In this document: positions 15,931-41,900 of the stretch, in pieces
Layout: each line of letters begins with the position of its first letter
How positions within the stretch are numbered: position 1 is the stretch's first letter
DNA from: Mytilus californianus
Taxonomy: Eukaryota
Length of the DNA: 64,000 bases
Assembly (NCBI RefSeq): GCF_021869535.1
Contig: NW_026262745.1
Location: 77,252,001 to 77,316,000 of the forward strand
Direction: 5' to 3'
Translations under genes and position numbers: made by a program
Notes under the pieces: generated by a model
What the model was told of the DNA's origin: nothing
What the model saw: only the letters and a program-made list of their open reading frames with translations
Databases searched by the model: none

Positions 15931-16248
15931 GTGACTAGGTACCTCTCAAGAATTTAATGATATTCTGCGTCAATTGTTGGTGGTTACTGACTGAGTTTTA
16001 TGAATACAGTAGACGCCTCAGGACAAACATTCCATGTTTGCCATGCACTCCTTTTTCTTTTACCAATGGAATGCAGATATGATATCATAGCCAGTGAAAG
16101 GCAGCCAAAAATCAATCAATCTTTTGTCCTAAACATGCATGAATTAATTGCCCCAAATGTTAAGCGAGCAACAATCAGTTATTCCAAATTGTTAATCATT
16201 TTACAGATTGAACACTTACATTCAAATGCATAAATGTAATGCACATTG

Positions 16249-16674
16249 ATCCCAAAGGGTGACTGGAGAATAGAAATATGGTCACTACAGGTTTTCCTAC
16301 GACCAGCAGTAAAATCCTTGCATAAGTGGAACGTCCGTTTGGCTGTGCGGGATGTATCAAGTACGCAGCCACGTCCGGTCAAAATGGGGACGTTAAATCC
16401 GATGCCTCGTGTAGAGAGAGTGCCACGCTCTCTGTACGTTAAGAACCCTCGAAACAACTCTTTGAGGGGCCCGTAGGTGGCCTTTTGCAAGGCAAAATTT
16501 CTGTCCCTATCCAATATACCCTTATTTTCCCGTAGCAATCTAAATTTCTACGACCTTATCCCGGACGGCCTAAATTACAAAACCTACCTATTGTATGCAT
16601 TGCTAATTTGTTCTCGTCCTGAACATGCATGAAATATTTGCCACTGGACGTAAAGCAAGCAACAATCAATCAAT
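16249..16674 (+). mobile_element. SINE (Deu/Nin-domain-like core, (CAAT)n tail), 12-bp TSD
   Basis: TSD TAATGCACATTG at 16237-16248 and 16675-16686; homologous to other copies in the window. Confidence 0.85.
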
Positions 16675-17747: not shown

Positions 17748-17902
17748 TCACATATAAAGAGGATTGTATGTATCAATAGAGCTACCTGGGCCTTTGATAA
17801 ATGAAACTGAACTTTTTATCAGTACTCCTGTCAATATTCCAGATAAAACCAAGCCGACTGATACGAAAACAACACTCAGTACATAGCCTGTGTTGTCAGC
17901 TT
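17748..17902 (-). CDS. Terminal exon: TM helix + cytoplasmic tail ([51 protein letters not shown])
   Basis: ttttag| phase-1 acceptor; ~23-aa hydrophobic stretch with GILTG (GxxxG); NPLY motif; TGA at 17750-17748. Confidence 0.82.
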
Positions 17903-20900
17903 CTAAAATGCAAAAAAAAAAATAACACAAAAAGATATACATAAATAAAGTAATGGTTAACATATTTAACATTGTCAAATCATGTGTGTGTCTGTCCCTA
18001 ATTAGGAGCCTGTATTCAAGTGGCTGTCGTTGGATGCTGTTTGCAATATTTGTTGTTAGTTTACTCTCGTTAGCGTAAATCAGGCCATTGGTTTCCGTTG
18101 TTGAACCGTTTAACATTTTTTTTTATAGTCCTGTAACCGAATACTTATATAGTAATATACATTAGGGACATATTGTTTTCTCTCAGGAACTACGAACTAG
18201 AGTTTCTTCCAATTTTGCAGCAAGCTTCTTGTATTATTGTAACATATAAGTTCATTTTAAACAACCGTTTGATATTTGCATTTAACTGTCTAAATTCAAA
18301 AAGCATTGAACTATTTCTTTTTGGTTACTTGCTAGCAATAATTAAAATTTCAACATTATAATTTGTTGAGAGTAATATTTATGATATTGTAAGCACTTCA
18401 GCTCCTTATTTTTTTTTTATATTAACATTATTTAGACACATAACGGTGAAAACCAATACAGTGTGTTTCTGTTAACAAATATAATGTTTTCGTGTCGTCC
18501 ACAATTTCATACTGCATAAACAGTTTTGTGTTTTGCAGGTGATGCATGCATCAGGTCTTGATCATTATAGAGTTCATGTAATTCCCTCAGTTTGTGTTTG
18601 CTTATCTTGATTTCCATCTTAAATCAATTAAAGGGACATACTTTTGCCTTATTTTATTTTTACCTGTCTCACAATGATCACCAGTATGTGTTAAAGGACA
18701 TGTACATGTGTAATCAAAGAGACCATCTACACAAGTACCTCCATTACGACATGGTAGATCCTCAAATTTGCAGAAATCAATATCTGGAATGTAACACAAA
18801 CTTGTTTGAATATATACTATCACCTGATACAACATATATACTGCAAAGTACAAGTAACGTTATCGTAATTATAAATATGTTTAGGATTTCACAATTACTT
18901 TTCTAAGATGTGCTAAATGGGAATTTTCGAGGGAACCAACTGCTCTTTTCGTTGAGTAGAACCGCTTTACTATAACATTTCATGACATGTATTTGCTTCA
19001 TGAGTTCTTTGACACAGCTTAGCTGCTTTTAAGATACCCTTTAAAACAAATATTTGTAATGAGAAAAAGGCATTATACACTGTTAAGTAATATATTGCCT
19101 ACGTCAACACATATCGGTACCTATCACCAGCTCCTGTTGTTGAGCAACTCCACGGGTTCAGTTGAAAAAAGGAACCTTTCGGATAATCTAATAACCTTCA
19201 ATTGTTAGTGGTTACATTTCGCACACTCCGGTTATTATCCTTTTTAATCCCCATGGTGACTGAGCGATATACATTTGTCACTTGGTCTTCTACCGACCAG
19301 CAGTTATACTCTTTATCAAACTGGGGTATCCGTTTTATTGTGTTTGGTGTATAAATACGCAACCATGTACTGTCAGATTTGAGACGTTAAATCAGATGCT
19401 TTGTGTAGAGAGAGTGCCATTCTCTCTGCACTTTAGAACCCTAGCAACAAATCCTTGATGGGTTCTTATGGGCCTATTGCAAGGCTTGATTTCTATCCCT
19501 ATCCTAATTTTCAAGTGGCAGTCCAAATTTCCATCCTTTATCCCGGTCGCCTCTTATAACAGGACCTATCTATTGTATAGATTGATCATTTGTTCTCGTC
19601 CTGAACATGCAAGACATATTTAACACTGGGCATAAATCAATAAACAATCAATCAATATTGCTGTTTTATTTAATGTTTTCATCAGTCTTTTTTAGCTTTT
19701 CTTGGATTTCATGTCATCTCTTTTCGGATGTCACAATTATATTTCAATTTCAATCTGAATTTAGAATGATAAGTTTTCTCTGTAAACAGAAAATAGTCTT
19801 TTTAATGGTTAAAACATTGCTTTATGAAAATTGTCCAAAAAAATATACAAAACAATACGTAATGATAATCCATTGCTCTATAGACAGACAATAATCGGTC
19901 AAACCAAATATATACACGAAAATACAGCAATCTGAATATTTGCATCATGGAATTTTCAAAGTCGTCATACATTGAATGATTCTCTAAGAAATGTTATCTC
20001 GGTAAGTTCTTTTTTCGTGAATTTCTGTATTTTATATATATGGTTCCTTTTAAAGCTGATTAAATTTAAAAAAAAAAACCAATTGTTTGAAGAGATGTTT
20101 CTTTAATGTTGGTCATACAGTGTGAGCAATTTTCCAATACTTAATCTGAATCAAGAATGATATGTTCGTCGTAACTAAAAGGAGAGCCCTACTTTCTGAG
20201 ACATGTGCCTTATATCCTTACAATACAAATGATACCTTCTTGGAGACACATAAATCGGATGATTGTACTACCAAAAATGTTTTTAGTCGATGCAGAGGAA
20301 AACAAATATAATGAAAAAATATATCTAAGTATTTTTCCTGTAAACGAGCTCATTGACGCCCCCCCACCTTTTTCAACATAAAACCCAATGACAATTTAAA
20401 ATCTCTATAAGCAAGTCGATTAAGATAAAAAAAATAAAGTTTTAACTGATTTGTTGTTTCATGATAAATTAATGAAACAAATAGGATGATGATTGCAATT
20501 GAGTACTAACAGATTAAATAAATGCTAGTGAAGAAACACATGCGATATTCACACAATAAATCAATATATAAAGATATAACAAAACTCGTTCATATTATTA
20601 ATTGTTGAATTGAAAGACTCATAGATTAGACGAAAGTAATACTTCGTTCTTACTATATAATTTTTCTTTAACAATTTAAAACCAAATGTTTACAAAATGG
20701 AAAGGTTCACCTCAGTTATTTGTTATGATATAATTTTTTTTAATCTTCTCAATGTTGTTTTGCCTGTTCATAAGACTGTTTAAATCTGATAAAACAAGTA
20801 TATGCTTTGAACATGTTGAAAAATAAAGATAAGGGATCAAAGTTTACGAGTTAAATTCTTACAAACTGCTAGAGTGTTGGTCTTCAACTTGACCAGTTGA

Positions 20901-23900
20901 AAGTTGAATAAAAAGTCACATGATTTACCAAAATGTTAAGACCCGTCAGACACGTCGTTTAAACGGGGCATTTATGAGGTTTTTTTTTTGAAAACCTTTA
21001 CATGTACTTATGAGATTGAATAAACTAACTTATCAATGATGACACAAACAATGTTCCTAGAGATGATAACAGTCATTGCAAAACAAACAAACTGATTTAA
21101 TCAACACATAACCTGTATAGGAAACTATAATATTGATTGATGATTGTTGGATGCTAAACGTCCAGTGGCAAATATTTCATGCATGTTCAGGACGAGAACA
21201 AATTAACAATAAACACAATAGGTAGATATGGTAATAGAGGTCAACATGGTTGTAGGTCGGGGAAATTTGGACTGCCACGGGAAAATGAGGGTATTTTAGA
21301 TAGGGATAGAATTGTAGCAAGGGTTTTTAACGTGCAGAGAGCGTGACACTCTCTACACGAGGCATCGGATTTAACGTCCCCATTCTGACAGGACGTGGCT
21401 GCGTATTTGATATATCCCACACAGCCAAACGGACGCTCCACTTTTGCAAGGGTTTTACTGCCGGTCGGAAGAAGACCTGTAATGACCATATTTCTATTTC
21501 CCAGTCACCCTTGGGGAGGAAGCTGAAATGGATATATAAATTGAAACAAATGGAATGCATTATTTATTTTGAAATATAATATATAAATAAGAAGATGTGG
21601 TATGAGTGCCAATGAAACAACTCTCCATCAAAGTCACAATGTGTAAAAAGTAAACAATTATAGGTTAAAGTAACCCTGCTTTAAATAGGCATTGGTGAGG
21701 GTATGCACAATCTTCAAAAAAAAAAAAAAATCATTAACGGGTTTTTTTAATAAGCATTAAAAAAAATGAAATACTCATTGCAGATACCAATAATCTCAAT
21801 GATATGTTGCTTCTTTATAATTTGTAGTGTAATATCATAATTTGAAATGTTTTGCAGAAATGAAATATTGCGGATTCGTTTTTGGCCTTTGCTCTTTTGA
21901 CAAAAAATGGTGGCACATATTTATTTTATGTGTTCACAACACCTGTATATTGAATGAACTTCATTAGATATGCTATTACAAAATGGGTGGAAATTAATTC
22001 GAATAATGTAATACAAACCAAAAAGGTAGTGTAAGATCTACCTTGCTTGATAGAGATGCAACCTTTTTAGTATTAGCAAACGTACACTTCTAAACCTTTC
22101 AACTAAAACGTAATGATTCACACTTTAAAGCAAATCTTTACACTATCCAAGTTAGTTTACCTGATTCGCAGTGAAAGCCAGTGTGGGAAACTGGACAGGT
22201 GCAAGTGTAGTTTAACACACCATCAACACATGATCCGTTGTTTTCACATATAACACCATCACAGAAATCGATATCTATAAGGAAATTTACCATAGTAATA
22301 ATAAATAATGAGAAAGGCACACATGCGTTATATGCATATGGTTATGCATAAAAAATAAAAGTTCAAGATAAGGAACAGTCAGTGATATAAGAGTGTCTGG
22401 CTTGACTTTATAGAATAGATATTAATAGGCGAAAAAAACTAAAGAATAGAGAAAAATGGACCAAAAAAATAAGATAAATTAAGAGAACAAAAGTGTGGTT
22501 TAATACTGTAAATTCAGAAATTATTGCAAGATTTTTATTGATGCAAATAGTGCCACTGGGTAAGTATCAAAATAAAAACTCGCATTCTGATATCTGATAC
22601 ATATATTTGTACTCAGCTTTTCATGAAATGTTCATTCTTCCAAAATCGCAATAATACATGCCCGCAATAAGTTCAGAATTTACAAACTAGAGAATATTGA
22701 ACAAAACAATAAAGATCAGAGATAAATTGCATAACAAATTTAGGAAGACAGAAATGAAAGCCCAACATCGAGACCATCATGCAAAGGAATACTTTAGATA
22801 TAATTCATGTTGAAGTCACAATATAATTGAATAAAACTTAGCAGAATTTAAAATACAAAATACTGTATAATATAACTATGTGCTAAGAAGAATGGTTCTA
22901 TGTTAGCTATGATGACATCTATTGCATTCTTATCATGTTCGCCCGGCAATAGAGAGAACGAGGCAATGTTCTGCAGCCACCAACTAATTGGGCCTACTAT
23001 TGCAAATCAACATTTATCAGTTGAATTTCCCGAAAAATATATAAAAGGAATTTCCCTTTAATCACATTTTAACTTCTTTCAAGGAAGTATTTTTTAAGGA
23101 AAGTTTTTCAATATTCTATACTAGTCATTTATCAACACGACGGGTGCCATATGTAGAGCAGGATATGCTTACCCTTCTGGAGCACCTGAGATAAACCCCA
23201 GTTTTTGGTTGGTTTCGTGTTGCTCAGTCTTTGGTTTTCTATATTGTTCTGTGTACTGTTGTTCGTCTGTTTGTCTTTTTCTTTTTTTAAGCTAAGGTGT
23301 TGTCAGTTTGTTTTCAACTTGTAAGTTTGAATGTCCCTTTGGTATCATTGGCCTCTCTTTTATCGCACCTCGGATAAATTACTGACGTTATAATTGGTTT
23401 AACGCCGTCACGTGGTGACCCACTATGGATCCGTATGGGTCAGTCAGTGGTTTTCGTATTGAGTTCCTTACGTCACGTCTATCATAAATGGTGACGATAT
23501 CTTTAAATGTTCGTGTATTTCATTGGTTATTTTAAACAAAACTTGGCAGGAAAAATCCCATGTGTGGTTAAATCATTATACGGTTCACCATCGACTTGCA
23601 TCTAGAAATTGACAATGATGGTCGGTTGAAAACAAAACATTACGACAAAAGAGTTGATTTCAGCTTTTCAATTGTGAACTTTTGATTTCTATGCATCACA
23701 ATTCCAGCAGCCCTTGCATACGGGGTATATATCTCCCAGTTGATACGATATTCCTCATCATTATTTCACTGATATAGAGTTGCTACTCACAAGGAAGCTA
23801 TTACACCAAGAGTTCCAAGTGGTGAAGTTGAAATCGTCCCTTTGTAAATTTTACGGACGCCATCACGAGTTGGTTGACCGTTATGGAGTATCCGTTTCTT

Positions 23901-26900
23901 AGATGAAAACGGATATGTTCCAATTGTCGTAGCTACAATCCCATCACCTTGTTCCCGAATGTGACCTACCGAATTAGACTTATCATCGGGTATGTACATA
24001 CTTGGAGAAATTCACCCAGTAAAATTTAAATCTTTATTTATACTCGGCACAGGCTAAATTATTTTTACGATTAACCTTAGTTTACTTTCAATTGTAACAC
24101 ACAATGTCTGGTTTGACTTCTAGACGTTTGACAGTACAGTCATATATCAACACTGGTACAGGCATTATATCACAACAAATGGTATTTTAAATTACAGATA
24201 GTTAATATATTATGGTCCTTTGTCTCAATTTTTCTTTTCGTTTATTGATGTCATGGTTTATAGGTATCAGACTGCAGTGTCTTTTTTAACATTTGCATAA
24301 CCATTACCATCAACAATAAGTAGGCGACTGTTCTAGTGGAAATTCGAATTTTTTTTTAAAACTTTACATGCTAAACTTTTATTGTGAAATGCAAATACCT
24401 ATGAAGACAATTGCAAATCGACCTTTAACAAACAACACTTACCCATTTACATAATGATGATTCTGTTCATGTATTCAGAAAACAATATTGTTGATAGTAT
24501 CAAATAAAAGAACATAATATTCAGTTAATAAATAAACATAAATTACCTGTTTCACAGTGGTCCCCTGTATGCGAAAAAGGACACTTGCAAGTGTACACAA
24601 ACAATCCATCGACACATACTCCTTTATTGTGACATATCACACCTTCACAAAAATCTATATCTAAACAAAAAATAACACAATTTGCATATGTATGCACCAG
24701 ATGCATAAAGTGTAGTTATATTTTTATATATACTTATAAAATACAGTTTAATCAGGGCCCTGGAGGCGTCTCGAATGTATAACCAATTTCATATAAATAG
24801 GCTTATCCTAGATGCTAGGATTATAATTTTCTACGCGAGACGCGCGTTTGATCTACAGTAAAGCTCGAGTCCAAAAATTTAAAACAGCCAAATAAAGTAC
24901 GAAGTTGGAGAGCATCGTGAGCATTGAGAACGCAAAATTCCGAAAGGTTTTACAAAATCTAACTAAGGTAATCTATTCCTTGGGTAGAAAATCCTTAGTA
25001 TTTCGAAAAAATCAATGTTTTGTTTACAGTTAATTTATAATTGTGACCATCGTAATGATAATTCATGTCAAAATATAAGTGCTGGCTACTGGGCTGGTGA
25101 TACCCTCGGGGTACATTTTTATAGGTAACTTTGTATTTCATATTCTTAATTTGGCAAATAACCAGTTGTGTGAAACACGACATAACGATGGGTATTTTTT
25201 TAAGAAACAGAAATGTCCTACCCTTCTGGACTACGAATCAAAATTCATACATCGTAGATAACATGGATAAACCGACCAAACCATGTTACATATAATTTTA
25301 CCCATTCCAAATATTCATTTGCAATGAGAATATACTTTCAGCTTTAACAAGATGAAAATATAGGAAAAAGTTTGAGAGAATGATAGCCGTGCCTTTGGTA
25401 TTGTAAATTGGTAATACTTTTTTTTCTTTGGCGACCAAGGGAACGCCTATAACATGTATAATTTGAATTGGGATATTTGTAATCAGGAAATCCATTCAAG
25501 TTGATTAATTGGTGATTAAGTGTTGACCATCAAACAGTTGAATGACATTGATTTAGCGACATAATATTCTTAATAAAGGGACAACAATAACACAAACACG
25601 ACAGGCCTATACAACTTTCAAATGCAATCATATCGTTGAAGTTTCCATTTTTAGCATAAAGATCGTTTAGTAGTATTTGTTTTGAACAAGAAATGGATAG
25701 AGGTAACCAAGGCATGAACTAGATTTTATTAAGTCATACACAAATTACGAACTATGTTTGGTCAAATATTTACCTATTTCGCAATGGTCTCCAGTATGCG
25801 AGCTCGGACAGGTACATATGTAATCAAGCACACCGTCTACGCATGTGCCTTCGTTTTGACATGTAACTCCTAGACAAAAATCTACCTCTACAACAATGGA
25901 AATCAATCATTATATATTGAGTAAAATATCAAACAGTAAGGTATCGGTAACATACTTTGCCATTTCCCATTAATTTTATTATTGGCCGGAATTGGTGCGC
26001 AAGTATTGTAATTTCTGAACAAAATTTTATTTTAGGATTTAAATAGTTTAAATTGGTTCATACATGGTAATATTAGTAACGCTTGCAAGTATATACGTAT
26101 TTGGTATTCACAATAATATAAATAATTACATGCTACAGTGTTACTGTGAAATGCAAAAGAAAATGATTTTCTGTAAACGGATAGAAAACCTAATTCAAAT
26201 ATGCATTTATAAATCAATGATAATTAACATACATACAGACCACAAATATGTTGGTATGATCGCGTAGAATGCTATAATTTTTATTACATCAACATATCAC
26301 TCGTTTACTTGTTTCGCAATGAACCCAGGTATGCGAAAATTGACAATTACAAGTGTACCGAAATAGTCCATCAATACATGCTCACTCGTTTTGACATTTG
26401 ATATCTTTACAAAAATCAATATCTAAAATGAAAAAAAATGCACTTAATTACATTTTTAATGATTTATCACCGTACTGACAAAATTCGAATACATATCTAC
26501 AAAATGCATCATCCCTTACAAAGGCAATAAGACTCGTGTCTTGCTTTGTGATGTTATCATTTATTTGAAATAGAGAAAGGCAAAGGGTTTAACGTCAATT
26601 TCAGCACTTTTGGCTATATCAGTCAATTTTCAGGCTTATTATATTCGATAACTTCAGAACTGTACAGTATTTATTTAGACAATTCAGCATAATGTTGATT
26701 ACAGGAACATAACAACACCTGTTTGAACATAGACTGAACAGATCTTAATTGACTGCAAGCAAATTGTTCAAATAAATCATTTTTTTGTGATATTAGATCA
26801 AAATGACTGTTTAAGATTAAATGCATTTCCTAGTGGGAGTACATGTATAAACTAATGATGAAGACTACACGTAGCAACTGTAATAGTTATAATAAATTAG

Positions 26901-29900
26901 GTATTTGTGTTATTAAGTGTTAACCTGCTTCACAGTGAACACCAGTATGTGAACCTGGACAGGTACAGGTGTAATTAAGCACACCGTCAACACAGGTGCC
27001 TCCATTTCCACAGGTTACTCCTTCGCAAAAGTTTATATCTATAACCAAAAAGAAATTATATAAAAACTAAGTACAATACTTCCATTAATTTGTTTGTACA
27101 AATTACGTAAGTAGTACAACATGTAAGTATCATATTGAAATCGCATTTCATTTGATATATCTATTTGGACGGACATTTATATTTTGTAATATGATTGCAT
27201 TCACGTATATGAAGTTACGACTTACGGTTAATAAATTCGCTTCAACGTCCTAATGGAGCACCAATATATTGACATTATCAACTAACCTTATACTAAAACG
27301 TTTGAGAAATATTTATTTATATATACAGAACCCCTCTTCTAAAAATCGTAAACCTATGGTCATTCACATTCTCCTGTTTGCACTGCAATTCATTTTGCAA
27401 TCACGAGATGTGTGATACATGCAACACTCACAATTGGTAAATTGTTTGTTATTACATAATTACTTGTTTCACAATCATTTCCGGTATGTGAAACTGGGCA
27501 TGTGCATCTGTAATCAAACACACCATCGACACATGTGCCCTCATTTCCAAATACAACTTTTTCACAGAAGTTGTGACTGTAATACATGGTAATAGAACAT
27601 TAATTATAATAATGCTGTCTTGTATGCGCCCCCCTCCAAAGATGACTGGGGAAAAGATATATAGTCACTACAGGTCTTCTTCCGACCGGCAGTAAAACCC
27701 TTTCCGAAGTGGGGCGTCCGCTTGGCTGCGCGGGATGTATCAAGTACGCAGCCACTTCCGGTCAGAATGGGGACGTTAAATCCGATGCCTCGTGTAGAGA
27801 GAGTGCCACGCTCTCCGCTCGTTAAGAACTCTTGCAACAACTCTTTGAGGGGTCCGTAGGTAGCCTGTTGCAAGGCAAAATGTCTGTCCCTATCCAACAT
27901 ACCCTCTTTTCCAGTGGCAGTCGAATTTCCCCGACCTTATCCAACACAGCTTCAATTACAAGACCTACCTATTGTATTTATTGTTAATTTGTTCTCGTCC
28001 TAAAATATTTGCCACTAGACGATCAGCAACCAACAATCAATCATTCAATCAATTTTGTATGCAGTCAATCAACATTAATTTATTTTCACACATTCGTAAT
28101 CTTATAAATTACAAACGTATATAGGAGTGCTGTCTAATGCACGTATTTTTCAGATTGCCTTGCCTTTGAAATGAAACATATTTGTACCTAAGTTGATTAA
28201 AATGTATCGCATATCCAGTTGGTTTCGCGCAAAATATATTGCTATTATAAATTGACATAAAGATTGATTAAAAAATGTATAAATATCTAAAAAAAAAAAA
28301 AACTTCTGATTCCGATTCAAATTAGAAAATGATGCATCAAAATGTACATATAAGGTAAAACAGTTTCTAATGACGAAAACTGTCAATTGTTATAACTATG
28401 AGAAATTAGTTGTTTATGTTATTAAGTATTAACCTGCTTCACAATGACCACCAGTATGTGAACCTGGACAGGTACAAGTGTAATTAAGCACACCGTCAAC
28501 ACACGTGCCTCCATTTCCACACGTTACTCCTTCACAAAAATTTATATCTACAATCAAAAGATATATACAAAACTAACTGATTACCTACAATTGATTTGTT
28601 TGTTAAAACTACGTAAATAGTAAGTAACATATTAGAATCGTATTGTTGTCCGATATATATTTTGGACGGACCAACATTTTATTATAGATAGATAGAATTT
28701 ACGCAGATTTACACTGATTTGAGCAACTTACAACTATTAAATCGGCTTTAATGTCTAAGGAAATTTAGATTGTTTTGAGCACAAATATATGGACATTATA
28801 AATTTACAGATTACAAATTGTTTAGAAATAATATTTTATATAGAGAACTTTTCTTCAAAGAATCATTAAATTTTGATCATGCACATTCTTTTTTTGACAC
28901 TACAATTCATTTGTGATCGAGCACGATGACTGATGCATGCAGTACTCCCAATTAATAAGTTGATTGTTATCACATAATTACCTGTTTCACAATCACTTCC
29001 GGTATGTGAAACCGGGCATGTGCAGCTGTAATCAAACACACCATCGACACAAGTGCCTCCATTTCCACACATAACTCCTTCACAGAAGTTTATATCTGCC
29101 AAAGAAAACCAGTTAACATACACACTGTCATGTATGCGCAGAAGCCGCCATTAATTTATTTACACGTATTCATAGACTAGTAAATTGCAAATGTATATAG
29201 GATTGCTGTCGTATGTAGATTATTTCAAAATAATCATATATTTCATAATGTGAATGCCTTTAAGAAAATTATCACTAAGACGATTGCTTTGCATTTTACA
29301 TGACAAATACAAACTTAATTGATTTTGAATGGTTTACATATCTTTTTGGTTATAGCGAGACATATCTAGCTACATGTATTATACAGTTATCGACAAATTG
29401 TTTTAAACAATGTGTTTATATCCAAAAGAAAAGACTTCTGCCTCCTATTCAAGTTAGAAAATAATCATATGTACATACAGGGTAAAATAATCTGTACACA
29501 GGAGCCTATTGTTCAGTGGTTGTCCTTTTTTTGTGTTGTTGATACGTGTTTCTCGTGTCTCGTTTTTTATGTAGCTTAGACCGTTTATTTTCCTGTTTGA
29601 AATGTTTTACACTTGTCATTTAGGGTCCTTTATAGCTTGCTGTTCGGTGTGAGCCAAGGCTCCGTGTTAAAGGCCGTACTTTGACCTATAATTTTTTATT
29701 TTTTACACACTGTGACTTGGATTGAGAGTTGTCTCATTGGAACTCATACCACATCTTCTTATTTATAATCAAGATGTACATCATGTACATATAGGGTAAA
29801 AACAATCTCAATGACGAAAACTTGTATCAACTGTTGTAATTATAATAAATAAGTTGATTATGTTATTAAGTATCAACCTGCTTCACAATGACCACCAGTA

Positions 29901-32900
29901 TGTGAACCTGGACAGGTACAGGTGTAATTAAGCACACCGTCAACACACGTGCCTCCATTTCCACACGTTACTCCTTCACAAAAATTGATATCTACAATCA
30001 AAAGATATATACAAAACTAACTGATTACCTACAATTGATTTGTTTGTTAAAACTACGTAAATAGTAAGTAACATATTAGAATCGTATTGTTGTCCGATAT
30101 ATATTTTGGACGGACCAACATTTTATTATAGATAGATAGAATTTACGAAGATTTACTCTGATTTGGGCAAATTAAGACTATTAAATCGGCTTTAATGTCT
30201 AAGGAAATTTAGATTGTTGGGAGCACAAGTATATGAACATAATTAATTTACGGATTACAAATTGTTTAGAAATAATATTTTATAGAAAGAACTTTTCTTC
30301 AAAGAATCGTTAAATTTTGATCATGCACATTCTTCCTTTTACACTACAATTTATTTGTGATCGAGCACGATGACTGATGCATGCAATACTCCCAGTTAAT
30401 GAGTTGATTGTTATCAAATAATTACCTGTTTCACAATCACTTCCGGTATGTGAAATCGGGCATGTGCAGCTGTAATCAAACACACCATCGACACAAGTGC
30501 CTCCATTTCCACACATAACTCCTTCACAGAAGTTTATATCTACCAAAGAAAACGAATTAACATACACACTGTCATGTATGCGCCAAAATCGCCATGAATT
30601 TATTTACACGCATTCGTAGACTAGTAAATTGTCTATATAGGATTGATGTCTAATGTAGATTTCCAAATAATCATATTTTTCATGATGTGAATGCCTTTAA
30701 GTAGATTGTCACCATGACGATTGCCTTGCATTTTGACATGAAAAATACAAACTTAATTGATTTTGAATGGTTAACATATCCAGTTGGTTCTAGCGAAACA
30801 TATCTGGCTATTGTAAAGTTATCGACAAATTGTTTTTAAAAAATGTATTTATATCTAAAAAAAAACAAAAAAGACTTCTGATCACGATTCAAGTTAGAAA
30901 ATGATGCATCAAAATGTACATATAAGGTAAAAACCGTTTCTAATGACGAAAACTGTCAATTGTTAAAATTATGAGAAATTAGTTGTTTATGTTATTAAGT
31001 ATTAACCTGCTTCACAATGACCACCAGTATGGGAAACTGGACAGGTACAGGTGTAATTAAGCACACCGTCAACACACGTGCCTCCATTTCCACACGTTAC
31101 TCCTTCACAAAAATTTATATCTACAATCAAAAGATATATACAAAAATAACTGATTACCTACAATTGATTTGTTTGTTAAAACTACGTAAATAGTAAGTAA
31201 CATATTAGAATCGTATTGTTGTCCGATATATATTTTGGACGGACCAACATTTTATTATAGATAGATAGAATTTACGAAGATTTACTCTGATTTGGGCAAA
31301 TTAAGACTATTAAATCGGCTTTAATGTCTAAGGAAATTTAGATTGTTGGGAGCACAAGTATATGAACATAATTAATTTACGGATTACAAATTGTTTAGAA
31401 ATAATATTTTATAGAAAGAACTTTTCTTCAAAGAATCGTTAAATTTTGATCATGCACATTCTTCCTTTTACACTACAATTTATTTGTGATCGAGCACGAT
31501 GACTGATGCATGCAATACTCCCAGTTAATGAGTTGATTGTTATCAAATAATTACCTGTTTCACAATCACTTCCGGTATGTGAAATCGGGCATGTGCAGCT
31601 GTAATCAAACACACCATCGACACAAGTGCCTCCATTTCCACACATAACTCCTTCACAGAAGTTTATATCTGCCAAAGAAAACGAATTAACATACACACTG
31701 TCATGTATGCGCCAAAATCGCCATGAATTTATTTACACGCATTCGTAGACTAGTAAATTGTCTATATAGGATTGATGTCTAATGTAGATTTCCAAATAAT
31801 CATATTTTTCATGATGTGAATGCCTTTAAGTAGATTGTCACCATGACGATTGCCTTGCATTTTGACATGAAAAATACAAACTTAATTGATTTTGAATGGT
31901 TAACATATCCAGTTGGTTCTAGCGAAACATATCTGGCTATTGTAAAGTTATCGACAAATTGTTTTTAAAAAATGTATTTATATCTAAAAAAAACAAAAAA
32001 GACTTCTGATCACGATTCAAGTTAGAAAATGATGCATCAAAATGTACATATAAGGTAAAAACCGTTTCTAATGACGAAAACTGTCAAATGTTATAATTAT
32101 GAGAAATTAGTTGTTTATGTTATTAAGTATTAACCTGCTTCACAATGACCACCAGTATGGGAAACTGGACAGGTACAGGTGTAATTAAGCACACCGTCAA
32201 CACACGTGCCTCCATTTCCACATGTTACTCCTTCACAAAAATTTATATCTACAATCAAAAGATATATACAAAACTAACTGATTACCTACAATTGATTTGT
32301 TTGTTGAAGCTACGTAAATAGTAAGTAACATATTAAATTTGTATTGTTGTCCGATATATATTTTGGACGGACCAACATTTTATTATGGATAGATAGAATT
32401 TACGCAGATTTACACTGATATGAGCAACTTACAACTATTAAATCGGCTTTAATGTCTAATGGAGTTTAGATTGTTCTGAGCACAAATATATGGACATTAT
32501 AAATTTACAGATTACAAATTGTTTAGAAATATTATTTTATATAGAGAACTCTTCTTCAAAGAATCGTAAAAAAATTGATCATGCGCATTCATCCTTTTAC
32601 ACTACAATATTTTTGATCGAGCACGATGACTAATGCATGCAATACTCCCAATTAATGAGTTGGTAGTTATTACATAATTACCTGTTTCACAATCACTTCC
32701 GGTATGTGAAACCGGGCATGTGCAGCTGTAATCAAACACACCATCGACACAAGTGCCTCCATTTCCACACATAACTCCTTCACAGAAGTTTATATCTGCC
32801 AAAGAAAACGAATTAACATACACACTGTCATGTATGCGCCAAAATCGCCATTAATTTATTAACACGCATTCGTAGACTAGTAAATTGTCTATATAGGATT

Positions 32901-35900
32901 GATGTCTAATGTAGATTTCCAAATAATCTTATTTTTCATAATGTGAATGCCTTTAAGTAGATTGTCACCATGACGATTGCCTTGCATTTTACATGAAAAA
33001 TATAAACTTAATTGATTTTGAATGGTTAACATATCCAGTTGGTTCTAGCGAGACACATCTGGCTCTTGTAATGTTATCGACAAATTTGATTTTAAAAATG
33101 TATTAATATCTAAAAAAAAAAACCAAAAAGACTTCTGACTCCGATTCAAGTTATAAAATGATGCATCAAAATGTACATATAAGGTAAAAACCGTTTCTAA
33201 TGACGAAAACTGTCAATTGTTATAATTATGAGAAATTAGTTGTTTATGTTATTAAGTATTAACCTGCTTCACAATGACCACCAGTATGGGAAACTGGACA
33301 GGTACAGGTGTAATTAAGCACACCGTCAACACACGTGCCTCCATTTCCACACGTTACTCCTTCACAAAAATTTATATCTACAATCAAAAGATATATACAA
33401 AACTAACTGATTACCTACAATTGATTTGTTTGTTAAAACTACGTAAATAGTAAGTAGCATATTAAATTTGTATTGTTGTCCGATATATATTTTGGACGGA
33501 CCAACATTTTATTATAGATAGATAGAATTTACGCAAACTTTCTATGATTTGAACAACTTACAACTATTAAATCGGCTTTAATGTCTAAGGGAGTTTAGAT
33601 TGTTCTGAGGTCAAATATATGGACATTATAAATTTACGGATTACAAATCGTTTAGAAATGATGTTTTATATAGAGAACTCTTCTTCAAAGAATCGTAAAA
33701 AATTTGATCATGCGCATTCTTCCTTTTACAGTACAATTCATTTGTGATCGAGCACGATGACTGATGCATGCAATACTCCCAATTAATGAGTTGGTTTGTT
33801 ATCACATAAATACCTGTTTCACAATCACTTCCGGTATGTGAAACCGGGCATGTGCAGCTGTAATCAAACACATCATCGACACAAGTGCCTCCATTTCCAC
33901 ACATAACTCCTTCGCAGAAGTTTATATCTGCCAAAGAAAACCAGTCAACATACACACTGTCATGTATGCGCAGAAACCGCCATTGATTTATTTACACGTA
34001 TTCATAGACTAGTAAATTGCCAATGTATATAGGATTGCTGTCTTATGTAGATTATTTCAAAATAATCATATATTTCATAATGTGAATGCCTTTAAGAAGA
34101 TTGTCACTAAGACGATTGCCTTGCATTTTACATGAACAATACAAACTTAATTGATTTTGAATGGTTTACATATCCAGTTGGTTCTAGCAATAAATATCTA
34201 GCTATTGTAAAGTTATCGACAATTTGTTTTGAAAAATATATTTATATCTAAAAAACAAAAAGACTTCTGATTCCGATTCAAGTTAGAAAATGATACATCA
34301 AGATGTACATATAGGGTGAAAACAATCTCAATGACGAAATCTTGTATCAACTGTTGTTATTATAATAAATTAGTTGTTTATGTTATTAAGTATTAACCTG
34401 CTTCACAATGAACACCAGTATGTGAACCTGGACAGGTACAGGTGTAATTAAGTACACCGTCAACACACGTGCCTCCATTTCCACATGTTACTCCTTCACA
34501 AAAATTGATATCTACAATCAAAAGATATATACAAAACTAACTGATTACCTACAATTGATTTGTTTGTTAAAACTACGTAAATAGTAAGTAGCATATTAAA
34601 ATCGTATTGTTGTCCGATATATATTTTGGACGGACCAACATTTGATTATAGATAGATAGAGTTTACGTAGATCTACTCTGATTTGAGCAAATTACAACTA
34701 TTAAATCGGCTATAATGTCTAAAAAAAATTTAGATTGTTCGGAGAACTAATATATGGATATTATAAATTTACGGATTACAAATTGTTTAGAAATGATATT
34801 TTATGTAGAGACCTCTTCTTCAAAATTTGATCATGCACATTCTTCTTTTTACACTACAATTCATTTGTGATCGAGCCCGATGACTGATGCATGCAATACT
34901 CCCAATTAATAAGTTGGTTGTTATCACATAATTACCTGATTCACAATCACTTCCGGTATGTGAAACCGGGCATGTGCAGCTGTAATCAAACACACCATCG
35001 ACACAAGTGCCTCCATTTCCACACATAACTCCTTCACAGAAATTTATATCTACAAAAGAAAACCTATTAACATACACACTGTCATGTATGCGCCAAAACT
35101 GCCATTAATTTAGTTACACGCATTCGTAGACTAGTAAATTGCAAATGTATACAGAATTCCTGTCGACTGTAGATTTTAAAATAATAATATTTTTCATAGT
35201 GTTAATGCCTTTAAATAGATTGTCACTAAGACAATTGTCTTGCATTTTACATGAAAAAATACGAACCTAATTTTTTTAAAAGGTTTACATATCCAGCCGG
35301 TTCTAGCGAGACATATCTGTTTAATATAAAGTTATCGACAAATTGTTTTAAAAAAATATTTTTATATCTAAAAAACAAAAAGACTTCTGACTCCGATTCA
35401 AGTTAGAAAATGATACATAAAGATGTACATATAGGTTAAAAACAATCTCAATGACGAAAACATGTATCAACTGTTGTTATTATAACAAATTAGTTGTCTA
35501 TGTCATTAAGTATTAACCTGCTTCACAATGACCACCAGTATGTGAACCTGGACAGGTACAGGTGTAATTAAGTACACCGTCAACACACGTGCCTCCATTT
35601 CCACACGTTACTCCTTCACACAAATTTATATCTATAATCAAAAGAAATAATATACAAAACTAACTGATTTACCATTGATTTGTTTGTTAAAACTACGTAA
35701 ATAGTAAGTAACATATTAAAATCGTATTGTTTTACGATATATATTTTGAACTGTGTACATTTATGATACATCCTGTCCACTACACAGAGATAAATGAAAA
35801 ACAGATGGCACTTTACATTTCTATCACCAGCTCATATTTCTAATTGAGACGAGAAATATGGCATGCAAATAGTGTGTGTTTACATAATTAAAAAAAGATA

Positions 35901-38900
35901 CTTGAAATTAAACAAATTGTAACTTGCAACAGATGAGGCTAAATTCATTTGATGGAAAATATAAAAATAAAAATATTGTTCACAGAACAAAGTCACAAAA
36001 CAAGATAGGACCAAAAAAGAATTATATGTCACAATTAATTAGTTTACACTGGTTGAAGTAAGAACCAAAGTATTCTTGAAATTCTTTTTTATTTCTTCAT
36101 ACAAGATATCATAAATATAACAATAAGGAGATGTGGTATGATTGCCAAAGAGACAATTATCCGCCAAAGTTTAAATAAAGTGGATGTACGCAATTATATG
36201 CAACCGTACGGCCTTCAACAATGAGGAAAAACCCATACCGTAGATTCAGCTATAAAAGGCCCCGGCATGAAAAATATGAAACAATTGAAATGAGAAAAAT
36301 AACGGCCTAATTTATAACAAAACAATTTACGAAAAACAAATATGACAGACGTGAACCAAAGACAACCACTGACATTTTAAAAGAAAAATTTCTTGCGACA
36401 TTGTTGCATATAGTTGTTCCTAAAAAATATAAGAAAAGGTTCTTGCAACTTTCTAGCAAACAAACTCTTTCTTTCAAACATTGTAGCAAAATTGCTGCAT
36501 TTTTCTCGCAAACAAATATTGTTGCGGTAACATTGCATAAAATTTGCAGGTTGCTGCAACAACCTGCAATTTTCTTGCGATCACTTCTTGCAAACAAATT
36601 TGTTATATTGCTGCAATATTGCAGCAAACTTTTCATTTCTGTAAGGGAAATAATAAAGATCCTTGTTAAAAAAATTACGGATATTTGAATTGAACCATTT
36701 TTTTTTTACCAATATAGGAAATAACTTTACAAGACTTCTGATTTCAAGGCAAGTTAGAAAAACATGACGTTGTGATTAGGTGAAAGTCACTCTCTTATGA
36801 CCAAGACTACATGTACATGTAGCACCTGTAATAATTGTAGTACATGAATTTTTCGAGTAATAATGTATAAACCTGATTTACATTGACCAGTTGTATTTCA
36901 ACCTAGACTGCTGTTATTAACATCATCGTCAAAACACGGGCCTCAATTTATCACATTGTGTAAGGCCATACAATAACCTATAAATGTTAACATCCACGTC
37001 ATTCGTTCTGTGATGGATATTTGATTCATTAGCAGCCATACCAGATTTGTATATTATATATTTTTGCAGCGTTTTTGATGTAATGAATCATGTCATTAAA
37101 GAATCACTGACTACAGAACTTCTTAATCTGTTAAGGCAGATATCATGACTTAGTTAAGTGGAAACTATATGTTTGATTGGCTATTGGGAACAAGATAGCA
37201 CCCCATCCAAAGGACAACTTAGTTTCTGGAACCACCGTAGCTGACCATTTCAGAAGATTTTATATGCTCCGAATTTTATTATTATTTAATTCCAGTTTTC
37301 CGAATCTAGTTTTGTGTTTTTGCTACTCTGAATGGAATGTTAGATAAGCTATCTAGAATGAATGTATCAACTGTTTTTAAAATGATTAAGTACTAGTATC
37401 ATTGCCATCAGTTTTCACAAAACAATTGATATGTTTGAGGTTTGAACATGTAGCGAAAATTTCTTTCGCCTGTTTATTTATCGTTTTTCACATTTTGTTG
37501 AATATGTTATAATAAGTCCATCACATATAAGTTCAACATGTATGTAACAACGTATTTGATTTTAACGAAAGAAATCTCTGTATTACTGAAAAATTATTAC
37601 ACCAGGGTTTTCAATATCACAAACTAGTCAAAACATTTACTAAATTTTATCATCGGTACAAGGACATCATTCGTAAATATAAATCAACATGTAGACATCT
37701 TATACGTTCAGGTATTTCACATCCAATCTTTTATGGTAATATTCTTTACAAAGCACAAAAATGTCGGCATTCACCTCAAAAGCTGACCAAACCTTTAAAC
37801 AGACTTATTCAGAAGGGATATAGTTACGATATTGTTGTCAAGTCATTAAGAATTGCATGTTTTGGTACTAATATTGATTCACTGATAGGGTCTTTGCATC
37901 GGAAATAAACACATTTATTCTAAAATCAGTTGTTGGCATGATACGGGTTATGTTTTTCTCATATATTTTATGATGGTATGATACTAAACCCCTAACGGGA
38001 GGGATTGTGCTTGATTTTAATATGATGAAGACATAATCTTTCAATCAGTTTAATTGAGGTCTGGAGCTGGCATGTCAGTAACTACTACTAGTCCTTTGTT
38101 TATTTATGTATCATTGTCATTTTCCTTAGTTTCTTTTGTTACCTATTCTGACATCGGACTCGGACTTCTTTTAAACTGAGTTTTACTGTGCGTATTGCTG
38201 TGTGTTTCTTTATTCTACATTGGCTAGAGGAATAGGGGGAGGGTTGAGATCTCACAAAACATGTTTAACCCCACCACGTTTCTCCAAAGTCAGGAGCCTC
38301 TGGCCTTTGTTAGTCTTGTATGTTTTTTAATTTTAATTCATTTATATGTTTTGGAGTTTAGTATGACGTACATTTTCACTGAACTAGTACACATTTTTAT
38401 TTAGAGGCCAGCTGAGGCCCACTTCCGGGTGTGGGATTTTCTCGCTTTATTGTAGACCCATTGGTGGCCTTCGGCTGTTATCTGCTCTTTGGTCGGGTTG
38501 TTGTCTCTTTGACATATTCCCCATTTCCATTCTGAATTTTATCAAACATACACTTGATCAAAATTGTATTTGTATATATTATTTTTTCTTTCGAAGTCTG
38601 AAAAAACGAAACATTGATGCAAATGTTATTTTGACGATTTTAGCTACTACTGGTTTACCTGTTTCGCAATTTTTCCCAGTATGTGAAACCGGACATGTAC
38701 AAGTATATCTTGATATGTCATCTGTACATACACCTTCATTTTGGCAAGGACTACTGGTACATTCATTTACACCTAAAACATGTTCGGTTTGAAAAGTTAC
38801 AAATGCTGTCACATATAATGTAACATATTGAATCTTTAGGATACCTGTATTATCTCTCACATTAATAGAAATCCAATACTGGTTGTGTGATACATTGTTT

Positions 38901-41900
38901 GTCCCTAATATGTTACCGTATTTGTTTTAGAAATAAAAAGTGAAATGAAAGTAAGATGCAGAAAAAAAGTGTGATTCCAAAATACTTTTTTTTAAATGGC
39001 AAACATTCATTTTATTAAAAAGATTTGTTTGAATGATGACTGGACTCGGACGCTTCAAGAGAAAATGTTGCATACGTATTTGGAAGGATATCAAATAAAT
39101 AAAGTACGAATACATCCAGTTTGTCACTTGACTGATACGCTGAACCCAATTTTCAAAAATTAAACTAGCTCAAAGTTAAGACTTGCATCAACATATATCA
39201 TTCAAGCCTAAACTAAACAGTCTGTGAAAACGCGACATTGGCGTACTCAATTCTAATCCTAGTATCTGTTTTGCTCTTATTCCAATATACAGCGTTCAGG
39301 TGGTTCTTGTGAAATAAAGTAATCTTTTTAATAAATTTAGGTATACGAGTTTCGTTATAACTTTTTTTTGTACATATCTAGACTAGACGCCATAACTTAC
39401 TGTGATATGATGAATTTACATTTGATTGGAATTGTCTATTAGAAACAAAAGATTAAAAAAGAAATAAAGACATCGAACTTACCATCTACTTTTATGGTAA
39501 CGCATGCTTGGTCCGATGATTGTCTGGAAAAGAAAACAATGTCATCTTTATTAAAATGTAAAGTCACTCAAGGAAAATTATTGATTGCCTTTTGTAGATT
39601 ATATTAATCCTTTACCTATCAATGAAGATTAATAAACAACATTTGATCGTCATAAACAAATATTAAAAAAAAACAATTATAAATATAAAGGAATATAAGT
39701 CTTAAATGGTCATTTTGATCTTAACATCATCTGAAAAGTCTGAACAACAAATTATTCAGTGATGTTCCTTCTTTTAGTCATTTTTTTTAGTCTTATCCAC
39801 TGCAGTAAATTTAGTAACGTCTAGACAATTCGCTTAATTGCAGTCAATTAAGTAATTCTCAATAGCTGTTCAGACAAATCAGTAGGATGTTGATGTGTAA
39901 CGGTACAAAACAACAATGAACTTTCTGCTTATAGACTGTACAGATTTGAATTGTCTGCAATTGAATTGTACGAACAGTTATGAATTTACAACAGGGTATA
40001 AATAAAGGCAACAGTAGTATACCGCTGTTCGAAACTCATAAATCGATAGAGATAAAAACAAATCCGGGTTACAAACTAAAACTGAGGGAAACGCAAAAGC
40101 CTGCAAATTAACTAAAAGACTGGAAATTACATAACGATTTATTGTTTAGTGGTTTTTGAAGTGTTCAAATCAGAATGACCGTTTTAGAACTAATTGTTTG
40201 CGTAGTGATAGGCACAAACATCAGCGGCAATTGTAGTACACCAATGCTATCGCATAGTTATTACGATGTATTTCATGCAATGGTGATCAAATATCAGTCC
40301 CTTAAATGACACTACAATAGTTTTTGAGTTATATGAACTTATCCCCGCAATGCTCTTCAAATTCGTACTTTATTTGGCCTTTATAACTGTTTTGTTTCGA
40401 GCGTCACTGATGAGTCTTTTGTAGACGAAACGCTGGTCTGGCGTACCAAATCTTGGTATCTATGATGAGTTTATTGTAAATGTATGAACTCACCCCATGC
40501 TATTCACAGCAGTATAACAAAATATATGACTTCCTGCTTGAGATAGAGACGGTGTCCATGTTACATTCACATACCATTGTGTTCCTGATAACCCGTAGGG
40601 TAAAAGTCCAGTTTTAATCATTCCAACAGGAGACACCGTTACAATTTCTGTAATGCTAAAAGAAAAAGAAATCGCTTCTACGTTGATCTTTATGTAATGT
40701 AAGGATTTGAATCATTCAGGCAAAGTTGACCTTAAATGGATTTGGTGATTTTTAAAGTCCTTTATGGTCATATAGCTCTTCAACTGTTTTGGTTCTCATA
40801 CATCCTTGACATTCACATTTGGTTGTGGGTGTTCTTGATGAAGATAAATCCAGAAAAGTGCATCTAATAAGTGCTGATTTTTTTTCATTCGATTAATCGC
40901 TTCGTCGACATCGTAACCTGTATAGTTCACATAGAGGTTAACATATCCAATACCTTCGTTTGTAAATTTCTATACCATTTTCAGTCAATTTTAACTTCAA
41001 GAAATCGTTAAAAAACCATGATTTTAATGAACTACACATTCGTTTAAAAAGAATAATTCTATAATATATAGAATTTCTGTATACGTTCAATGCATTATTC
41101 AACATTTTGTGCCAACTCTGTCAATGATTTTTTTTCAAATAAGAACACGATTGCTACGCCGTAGCGAAATTACACTCGCCGTTGTATAAAAAGAAAATTA
41201 AATCGCGTTTCTTACTGTGTTGTTGTGGAACGATTGTTAAAGTATAAAAAAAAGTCGCATAAAAATCATGGTAAAAGAAAAAAGACGAATTAATATGGTC
41301 AACATCACAGTATAACAAACTAATCTATTAATTAAGAGTCCTTTCTGTCAAATGGTGTCAGAGGATTTGTGTTCACAATGTGTAAGTTAGATACAATAGT
41401 ACTAAAATGGTCAATATTCCATAACGTCCATCAAAATTGGAAGGGTTTTTGTTGCTCAGTCTTTAGTTTTTCTATATGTGTAGTGTTTTTGGGCCGGTTT
41501 TTTTCGCCTTGGCATTGTCAGTTTGTTATAACGTGTATAAGTTTTGAATGTTCATTTGGTATCATCCGCATCTTTTTTTGCTGTTATTTCAAAGTGTCGC
41601 AAATTTGTTGTATGAAACTTGTTCCTCTCTTGGGAATTGATGCGCCAAGAGGACCATAATCAGAGTTTTTTGTCTGCTAAGAATTATAATATACCATGTG
41701 TAAAGTATAATTTTTAAATAAATCATATGTACTTTACACTGAACTTTTGAACCAATGGAATTGATGTATAAATAGCTACCATTGTTAAACGAAAGCAACC
41801 GAGTAATGATTGAAATAGTGTATATTCAGGTCGACTGAATTATCAACTCCATCTTCCGAATGTAGGTTAAAAGTGTGAATCCTAAATATTTATTTCAATT

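What the first reader, a model, noticed from the sequence alone, without database searches (positions are those of the whole stretch)
26880..35710. Recent exon-pair VNTR: a tunable-length EGF stalk
Seen: a ~1.13-kb unit with two 114-nt phase 1-1 EGF exons plus introns is repeated 7-8 times, with near-identical introns. Type-A donors (GTTAAT/GTTGAT) are weak matches to consensus. Inference: unequal crossover is expanding the stalk, and symmetric phases allow in-frame copy-number variation or exon skipping. Receptor length could therefore vary between alleles or cells.
Basis: partly seen in the sequence, partly recalled or inferred. Interest (0 to 1): 0.72.

Follow-up and report, generated by a model that had tools for sequence, protein, structure and literature searches.

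The report
Tandem EGF exon pairs in mussel receptor
A mussel cell-surface receptor gene has lengthened its stalk by repeatedly duplicating a two-exon EGF cassette; the array is real and differs in copy number between sister species, but this is an ordinary kind of gene evolution, and variation between individuals or cells could not be tested.

Summary
The array exists. On the minus strand of a Mytilus californianus window, a two-exon EGF cassette (A and B exons, each 114 nt, phase 1-1) forms six full units of 1.12-1.44 kb. There is also a truncated unit at the 5' end and an older, diverged unit.

"Near-identical introns" is overstated. Only one unit pair is about 99.5% identical; the others are 79-96%. 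Exons are 95-100% identical and under purifying selection (pN/pS about 0.2).

The gene is intact. It encodes a Sib-type head, 19 usable EGF exons, two decayed exons that must be skipped, a TM segment and an NPLY tail.

In M. coruscus the ortholog has 4.5 rather than 6.5 young units and a separate triplication. Units do not cluster by species, and several are one-to-one orthologs marked by shared insertions. So most of the array predates the species split, and copy number has changed in both lineages since.

The closest relatives in the M. edulis complex have 3-5 EGF exons. Annotated isoforms of relatives differ by exactly one EGF exon or one A+B pair.

This is a new member of a known kind. The scan had already noted the Sib-type receptor family on another piece of this genome.

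The parts
49385..49501 (-). Coding exon 1: start codon, signal peptide and the start of the Sib-type head (HFRGG motif). Bounds are approximate.
   Evidence: tblastn of P0159 residues 1-39
46118..46378 (-). Head exon 2
   Evidence: 97% identical to M. coruscus P0298 and 86% to P0159. Sub-threshold SIBA-E_N hit when scanned alone, 13.7 bits
44273..44452 (-). Head exon 3
43155..43268 (-). Head exon 4 (DDDGD..CRW motif). Bounds are approximate.
42299..42571 (-). Head exon 5
   Evidence: 99% identical to P0298
40493..40669 (-). Head exon 6
39480..39522 (-). Small exon 7 ([13 protein letters not shown]). Bounds are approximate.
38659..38772 (-). EGF exon N1. It is distinct from the array and carries a CTSSPC motif.
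28383..35766 (-). Young A/B array: exons A8 B7 A7 B6 A6 B5 A5 B4 A4 B3 A3 B2 A2. Homology ends about 120-135 nt upstream of A8.
35518..35631 (-). Exon A8, donor GTTAAT
34936..35049 (-). Exon B7, donor GTAATT
34398..34511 (-). Exon A7
33814..33927 (-). Exon B6, donor GTATTT
33264..33377 (-). Exon A6
32682..32795 (-). Exon B5
32135..32248 (-). Exon A5. This is the start of unit U5, the newest duplicate together with U4.
31555..31668 (-). Exon B4
31007..31120 (-). Exon A4 (start of unit U4)
30426..30539 (-). Exon B3
29878..29991 (-). Exon A3, donor GTTGAT
29488..29782 (-). Insertion of about 300 nt in intron A3>B2, shared with M. coruscus intron cA4>cB3. Bounds are approximate.
28982..29095 (-). 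Exon B2
28434..28547 (-). Exon A2
27604..27900 (-). TE-like ORF inserted in intron A2>B1. It belongs to the same family as 16182-16547. The long intron is shared with M. coruscus.
27464..27577 (-). Decayed exon B1: 1-nt deletion at its 5' end, second Cys changed to Phe, donor CAA|GT. It must be skipped.
   Evidence: pN/pS 0.44
26925..27038 (-). Exon A1: old but intact, donor GTTAAC
   Evidence: One nt differs from the M. coruscus ortholog.
26309..26422 (-). Dead exon P0: in-frame TGA, with AG and GT still present. It must be skipped.
25774..25887 (-). EGF exon E4
24547..24660 (-). EGF exon E3
22161..22274 (-). EGF exon E2
18664..18783 (-). EGF exon E1 (120 nt)
17748..17902 (-). Last coding exon: TM segment, short tail ending in NPLY-M, and the stop codon

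Best explanation
The window holds an intact M. californianus gene for a single-pass surface protein. From the N-terminus it has a signal peptide, a head of about 380 aa of the Sib ('integrin beta-like protein A-E') type, a stalk of EGF domains, a TM helix and a short tail ending in NPLY.

Each EGF domain sits on its own phase 1-1 exon. The stalk grew by repeated unequal crossing-over that duplicated an A+B exon pair together with its introns. The oldest copies lie nearest the membrane and the youngest in the middle of the array.

Shown: most units already existed in the common ancestor of M. californianus and M. coruscus. Both lineages have since gained or lost whole units. One M. californianus unit (U5/U4) is a very young duplicate. 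The exons are kept by purifying selection. Two decayed exons sit inside the array.

Inferred: because every exon is phase 1-1, each gain, loss or skip changes stalk length by 38 aa without disturbing the head or the anchor. The head would then be held at different distances from the membrane. The U5/U4 copies differ by 0.5%, far below this species' 2.73% heterozygosity, so copy number is probably still polymorphic.

Not shown: any effect on function, and any skipping in this gene beyond the two dead exons.
For: - Repeat structure and exon anatomy. EGF domains.
- The unit occurs only at this locus in the genome.
- Head exons are intact and 91-99% identical to the M. coruscus ortholog, except exon 4, where the BLAST match is 85%.
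- The head of the closest full-length relative passes Pfam SIBA-E_N, 29.1 bits against a cut-off of 28.1.
- Identity by partition: exons 95-100%, introns 79-99.8%.
- pN/pS is 0.17 for young A exons, 0.22 for young B exons, 0.08 for A1 against young A, and 0.44 for decayed B1.
- M. coruscus layout: 5 A and 4 B young exons, the same B1 and A1, and a [P0,E4] unit present three times.
- Intron trees: units of the two species intermix, and 0% of bootstrap trees give a single origin per species. Orthologous unit pairs have 100/100 support and shared insertions. Divergence between the species is about 4-5%.
- U5 and U4 differ by 5 substitutions and 1 indel. U6 against U5 is a mosaic of near-identical and 7-10% diverged segments.
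- EGF exon counts in relatives: 3, 4 and 5 in M. edulis, M. trossulus and M. galloprovincialis, and 3 in the neighbouring paralog.
- Isoforms of relatives differ by exactly 38 aa, 76 aa or a 96-nt cassette.
- The assembly comes from 45x HiFi reads with N50 14 kb, longer than the array. Heterozygosity is 2.73% (PMC9710001).
Against: - No reads or RNA could be examined. Expression, the use of every exon and allelic copy number in M. californianus are therefore unverified.
- No protein of this window's gene appeared in two protein searches covering 278-1612 aa. No spliced transcript-derived protein of the array was found. The gene may be unannotated, called a pseudogene or withheld.
- The M. coruscus isoforms come from BRAKER with short-read hints. 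In near-identical repeats, multi-mapping reads can produce such models.
- The M. coruscus assembly used here is a Nanopore/Illumina hybrid, so its copy number is less secure.
Confidence: 0.8

Rival explanations
1. Assembly artefact: part of the array, above all the near-identical U5/U4 pair, is a false tandem duplication. Alternatively, the true array is longer and was collapsed.
For: U5 and U4 differ by only 0.5%, below the 2.73% heterozygosity. Two alleles of one unit placed in tandem could look like this. No reads could be laid on the array.
Against: All other units differ by 4-20% and carry private indels or insertions, so they cannot be confused with one another. The window has no N. HiFi reads (N50 14 kb, 45x) span the roughly 7.4-kb young array. 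An independent assembly of the sister species has the same kind of array, with orthologous units.
Confidence: 0.06
2. Concerted evolution of an old array with a fixed number of units: similarity between units reflects ongoing gene conversion, not recent duplication, and copy number is stable.
For: Identity between units is mosaic, with near-identical tracts around the exons. The last 60 nt before the A exons are 98.9% identical.
Against: Units do not cluster by species, and several pair one-to-one across species, so homogenisation is weak. Copy number differs between the two species on both sides of an orthologous marker unit. The U5/U4 identity covers exactly one whole unit.
Confidence: 0.1
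3. Decaying gene: the locus is a pseudogene or is becoming one, and the array is neutral debris.
For: Two of 21 EGF exons are dead. No protein of this gene was seen in the protein collection.
Against: All seven head exons, 19 EGF exons and the TM/tail exon are open with AG/GT boundaries. pN/pS is 0.08-0.22. The ortholog is modelled as coding in M. coruscus. Both dead exons are phase 1-1, so skipping them keeps the frame.
Confidence: 0.07

Closest known systems
Human LPA kringle IV-2 VNTR (from my own knowledge)
   Same: The tandem unit consists of two exons plus their introns. Each copy adds one protein module in frame. Copy number sets protein length.
   Different: The LPA unit is about 5.5 kb with nearly identical copies and proven large allelic variation. 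Here the units are 1.1 kb and mostly 5-15% diverged. Only differences between species are shown. The protein is a membrane receptor stalk, not a secreted apolipoprotein.
Domain-exon copy-number variation in DMBT1 (SRCR exons) and CR1 (LHR duplication), and differing numbers of SCR exons in selectins between species (from my own knowledge)
   Same: Phase 1-1 module exons are gained or lost by unequal recombination. This changes the length of an extracellular stalk or the valency of the protein.
   Different: The module type and the organism differ. In those genes allelic variation or effects on function have been measured. Here they have not.
Dictyostelium Sib proteins (SibA-E) and the metazoan genes annotated as 'integrin beta-like protein A-E'
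   Same: The closest full-length relative passes the Pfam SIBA-E_N model. The protein is single-pass, with a short tail carrying an NPxY-type motif (NPLY).
   Different: As I recall them, the Dictyostelium proteins carry a VWA domain and bacterial-type repeats, not an EGF stalk. Talin binding is untested here. The head occurs in many other architectures in molluscs, such as adhesion GPCRs, SRCR/ZP and Sushi proteins.
Multi-EGF proteins such as Notch, fibropellins and Crumbs
   Same: Tandem EGF domains. The A and B exons carry C-x4-T-C between the second and third Cys, which fits the O-fucose consensus as I recall it.
   Different: No Notch, DSL or LNR parts are present. The head is different. 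Database names such as 'fibropellin' or 'delta-like' for the M. coruscus ortholog only reflect EGF similarity.

Membership tests
EGF-like domain (Pfam PF00008) | Six-cysteine pattern and a profile score above Pfam's cut-off | tested here: met
   Six-Cys pattern in 19 exons. Exon A scores 25.9 bits, exon B 22.1 and N1 28.8, against a cut-off of 21.5.
Calcium-binding EGF (Pfam PF07645) | N-terminal D/N-x-D/N-E/Q-C motif and a profile score above the cut-off | tested here: not met
   A and B exons begin DINFC and give no EGF_CA hit. N1 (VNEC) scores 13.4 bits against a cut-off of 27.
Sib-type head (Pfam PF24907, SIBA-E_N) | Profile match above the gathering score at the N-terminus | tested here: inconclusive
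Window exon 2 alone scores 13.7 bits, E 0.062. The closest full-length relative, P0159, is 86-89% identical over most head exons (66-80% in exons 1, 4 and 6) and scores 29.1 bits against 28.1.
Sib / integrin-beta-like adhesion receptor | Cytoplasmic NPxY motif that binds talin | not testable with these tools
   The NPLY motif is present at the C-terminus. Binding is not testable here. The closest relatives in the M. edulis complex read HDHLY instead.
VNTR (variable number tandem repeat) | Head-to-tail array of similar units | tested here: met
VNTR (variable number tandem repeat) | Copy number polymorphic between alleles of one species | not testable with these tools
Only a difference between species is shown.
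Cassette (alternatively skipped) exons | Transcripts both with and without the exon | not tested
   No RNA data for this gene. Indirect evidence only: isoforms of relatives differ by exactly one EGF exon or one A+B pair.

The most novel reading that the evidence does not exclude
Stalk length of this Sib-type receptor is a standing length polymorphism in M. californianus. Alleles differ by whole A+B units, and this changes how far the adhesive or recognition head reaches from the cell surface. Selection could act on that, for example in recognition of microbes or substrates. The in-frame repeated exons with a sub-consensus donor may add skipping that differs between cells.
Probability: 0.3. Interest if true: 0.55.

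Novelty: new member of a known kind. Interest (0 to 1): 0.35.

Why it matters
This is a clean, datable series for one receptor stalk. Congeneric mussels carry 3, 4, 5, about 16 and 19 EGF domains. Shared insertions identify orthologous units, and two exons are caught at different stages of decay. That makes it a good natural case for asking how stalk length affects a poorly studied family of animal surface receptors with a Sib-type head. It also warns annotators that such arrays tend to be mis-modelled. It does not reveal a new mechanism.

Tried and rejected
- TRF found nothing because its longest period is 500. The repeat finder was used instead.
- The look-up of sequencing runs: the first request was one base too long. 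No read depth, long-read spanning, allelic or RNA test was possible, and read laying was not used.
- I looked for the M. californianus protein of this gene with two word searches covering 278-1612 aa. None was listed.
- I looked for spliced transcript-derived proteins of the array using part of the M. coruscus ortholog. There were no near-identical hits. This shows absence from that collection only.
- Logan members of the ortholog's cluster (P0300, P0301) turned out to be genomic exon-2 ORFs from the M. edulis complex, not transcripts.
- 'Poison exon' reading of P0, rejected: its AG and GT are intact in M. californianus, but the acceptor and donor are destroyed in M. coruscus. So there is no conserved function.
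- The idea that the whole stalk is ten alternating A-like/B-like pairs: the motif alternation (GVL.Y against G.F.Y) holds along the stalk, but overall identity of E3 and P0 to A or B is ambiguous. I keep it as tentative.
- The measurement of exon-proximal intron conservation gave mixed results, partly from alignment noise around the insertions. It is not used beyond the 98.9% identity upstream of the A exons.
- No divergence date for M. californianus and M. coruscus was found in the papers searched. Ages are given only relative to the divergence between the species.
Exons were searched one by one by reference. Full-length comparisons used stored proteins of relatives.
Full report
**Observation.** The repeat finder shows eight in-register copies between 26874 and 35766. 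Their spacing is 1509, 1444, 1129, 1128, 1129, 1134 and 1120 nt. TRF was blind to this because its longest period is 500. The window contains no N.

The coding strand is the minus strand. A six-cysteine EGF pattern appears in 19 short open stretches between 18671 and 38761. Two further copies fail the pattern. Each exon is 114 nt (E1 is 120 nt) and is bounded by AG and GT. Each starts with two bases that complete a codon and ends with one base of the next, so both flanking introns are phase 1. To read the split codons I added one base before and two after each single exon. Both exon types pass Pfam EGF.

**Order of exons along the transcript.**
- N1
- A8 B7 A7 B6 A6 B5 A5 B4 A4 B3 A3 B2 A2 (the young array)
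- B1 (decayed), A1, P0 (dead)
- E4 E3 E2 E1
- the TM/tail exon

A donors read GTTAAT, with GTTGAT in A3 and GTTAAC in A1. B donors read GTAATT, with GTATTT in B6.

**How alike are the units?** Among the young units, exons are 95-100% identical. A>B introns are 79-99.4% identical and B>A introns 91-99.8%. Only U5 and U4 are near-identical, with 5 substitutions and 1 indel in 1128 nt. U6 against U5 is a mosaic: 2 differences in the first 223 nt, 21 in the next 300, none in the next 139, and 44 in the last 440. That pattern fits crossovers or conversion between units. The oldest unit (B1>A1) is about 68% identical to the rest. Two units are longer because of an insertion of about 300 nt (intron A3>B2) and a TE-like ORF (intron A2>B1). 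So 'near-identical introns' and 'recent' hold for one unit pair, not for the array as a whole.

**The decayed exons.** B1 has lost one base at its 5' end, which makes it 113 nt after the AG. It also has Phe in place of the second Cys. P0 has an in-frame TGA. Both must be skipped to make the protein. Because every exon is phase 1-1, the frame survives.

Upstream of N1 lie seven intact head exons. They are 91-99% identical to the M. coruscus ortholog, apart from exon 4 at 85% in the BLAST match. The first encodes a signal peptide. The last exon encodes a TM helix and a tail ending in NPLY-M.

An exhaustive profile search with exon 2 found about 200 relatives. The head is fused to many different architectures: EGF plus TM, adhesion GPCR, SRCR/ZP and Sushi. 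The closest full-length relative passes Pfam SIBA-E_N, at 29.1 bits against a cut-off of 28.1. Exon 2 alone is sub-threshold. NCBI names relatives 'integrin beta-like protein B/C'. At least 20 paralogs exist in this genome. The nearest lies directly downstream, and its first exon is at window 420-575.

By summing exons, the product would be about 1,150 aa with 19 EGF domains.

**Selection.** By Nei-Gojobori counts, pS is 0.074 and pN 0.013 among young A exons of both species (ratio 0.17). For young B exons the ratio is 0.22. For A1 against the young A exons pS is 0.21 and the ratio 0.08. For decayed B1 the ratio is 0.44. The exons are therefore maintained as coding sequence. Their synonymous divergence matches the intron divergence, so exon similarity is mainly constraint rather than youth.

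**Comparison with the sister species.** The M. coruscus ortholog (locus L016) has this layout:
- N1
- 5 A and 4 B young exons
- the same B1 (98% identical) and A1 (99%)
- a [P0,E4] unit present three times at 0-0.5% divergence, plus an inverted P0 remnant
- E3, E2, E1

P0 is dead there through different lesions: the acceptor reads CG, there is no GT donor, and there is a 1-nt deletion. The TGA is absent. All A donors are again GTTAAT, and A1's donor is GTTAAC.

On maximum-likelihood trees of the two intron classes, the units of the two species intermix. No bootstrap tree gives a single origin per species, and well-supported branches force at least 3-4 changes of the species label. Several units pair one-to-one across the species:
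- cal A3>B2 with cor cA4>cB3: 100/100 support, a shared insertion, 93% identity.
- cal A2>B1 with cor cA2>cB1: 100/100 support, a shared TE.
- The B1>A1 and A1>P0 introns.
- Less firmly, the first unit of each array.

Divergence between the species at these orthologous introns is about 4-5%. Relative to the shared marker unit, M. californianus has four extra units on the distal side and M. coruscus two extra on the proximal side. So the array was already multi-copy in the common ancestor. Homogenisation has been weak, and whole units have been gained or lost in both lineages since. The newest M. californianus duplicate has about one tenth of the divergence between the species.

**Wider relatives.** The closest relatives in the M. 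edulis complex carry 5 EGF exons in M. galloprovincialis, 4 in M. trossulus and 3 in M. edulis. There a different (E2-like) single exon is the one repeated. The downstream paralog in this genome has 3. Stalk length is thus labile across the family.

**Isoforms.** This evidence is indirect.
- M. galloprovincialis LOC143042452: isoform X2 equals X1 minus exactly one 38-aa EGF.
- M. coruscus: two models equal the longest model minus exactly one A+B pair (76 aa), at two different places.
- The neighbouring M. californianus paralog: isoforms X1 and X2 differ by a 96-nt decayed EGF cassette.

The M. coruscus models come from BRAKER with short-read hints. In repeats this can create false skips, so I give these models little weight.

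**Is it an artefact?** The unit occurs nowhere else in the assembly, and there are no gaps. All units but one pair are clearly distinguishable. The assembly used 45x HiFi reads with N50 14 kb, longer than the array. The sister species has a homologous array. A false U5/U4 duplication remains possible but unlikely.

**Mechanism.**
- Shown: tandem duplication and loss of a two-exon cassette, with mosaicism between units. This fits the expected product of unequal crossing-over between misaligned units.
- Inferred: each step changes the stalk by 76 aa and leaves the head and anchor untouched. From general knowledge of EGF arrays, each domain should add a few nanometres of reach.
- Inferred: the U5/U4 copies differ by 0.5%, against 2.73% heterozygosity. 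That suggests the newest duplication is younger than typical allelic coalescence and may still be segregating.
- The A donor departs from consensus at +3 and +5, and the B donor at +5 only. The A donor has nevertheless persisted through all copies and both species next to constrained exons. It is functional, and there is no evidence that it drives skipping.

**Sequence motifs, read directly and compared with consensus patterns from my own knowledge.**
- A and B exons carry C-G-N-G-G-T-C between the second and third Cys, which fits the O-fucose pattern.
- A exons carry an NYT sequon, while B exons read DYS.
- N1 carries C-T-S-S-P-C, which fits the O-glucose pattern.

**Verdict.** This is a real exon-pair array that changes over evolutionary time, in an intact receptor gene. 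It is only partly recent. It is an ordinary mechanism: duplication of phase 1-1 module exons, comparable to LPA KIV-2, DMBT1 or CR1. Allelic and cellular length variation is plausible but untested.

Noticed in passing
window 420-575 (minus strand) and G000:C165:77232001-77252000: First coding exon of the neighbouring paralog, annotated 'integrin beta-like protein B' or 'psiF-like' (P0157, P0273). It has only three EGF exons plus a 96-nt decayed EGF cassette that separates RefSeq isoforms X1 and X2.
   Followed up: partly
window 27604-27900 and 16182-16547 (minus strand): Two copies of one TE-like ORF family with no Pfam hit. One sits in intron A2>B1. M. coruscus shares that long intron, so the insertion predates the species split.
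   Followed up: partly
window 11743-12363 (minus strand): A 207-aa ORF with a sub-threshold GIY-YIG match (19.6 bits against 22.6). It may be the endonuclease of a Penelope-like element. Reverse-transcriptase-like ORF fragments lie at 7587-8248.
   Followed up: no
window 57643-60262 (minus strand): A cluster of long open stretches of 100-170 aa with no clear Pfam family. It is probably a large mobile element or an unannotated gene.
   Followed up: no
L016:31177-36287 (M. coruscus): The [dead P0 + E4] unit is present three times at 0-0.5% divergence. It is followed by an inverted P0 remnant (35496-35607) and a partial E4. This is a separate, species-specific amplification that copies a dead exon along with a live one.
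   Followed up: partly
L019 (M. trossulus), protein P0271: The 921-aa RefSeq model fuses the receptor (4 EGFs, TM, tail) to part of a downstream Sib-head/GAIN gene. It is probably an annotation chimera.
   Followed up: no
G000:C13:4414024-4414425: Four EGF-like matches spaced 106 nt apart on another chromosome, 76-77% identical to the A exon. This is a different, tightly packed EGF repeat.
   Followed up: no
window 17748-17902, compared with P0159, P0160 and P0157: The tail motif NPLY is kept in this gene, in M. coruscus and in M. galloprovincialis LOC143042452. It reads HDHLY or HNHFY in the closest M. edulis-complex relatives and in the neighbouring paralog.
   Followed up: no
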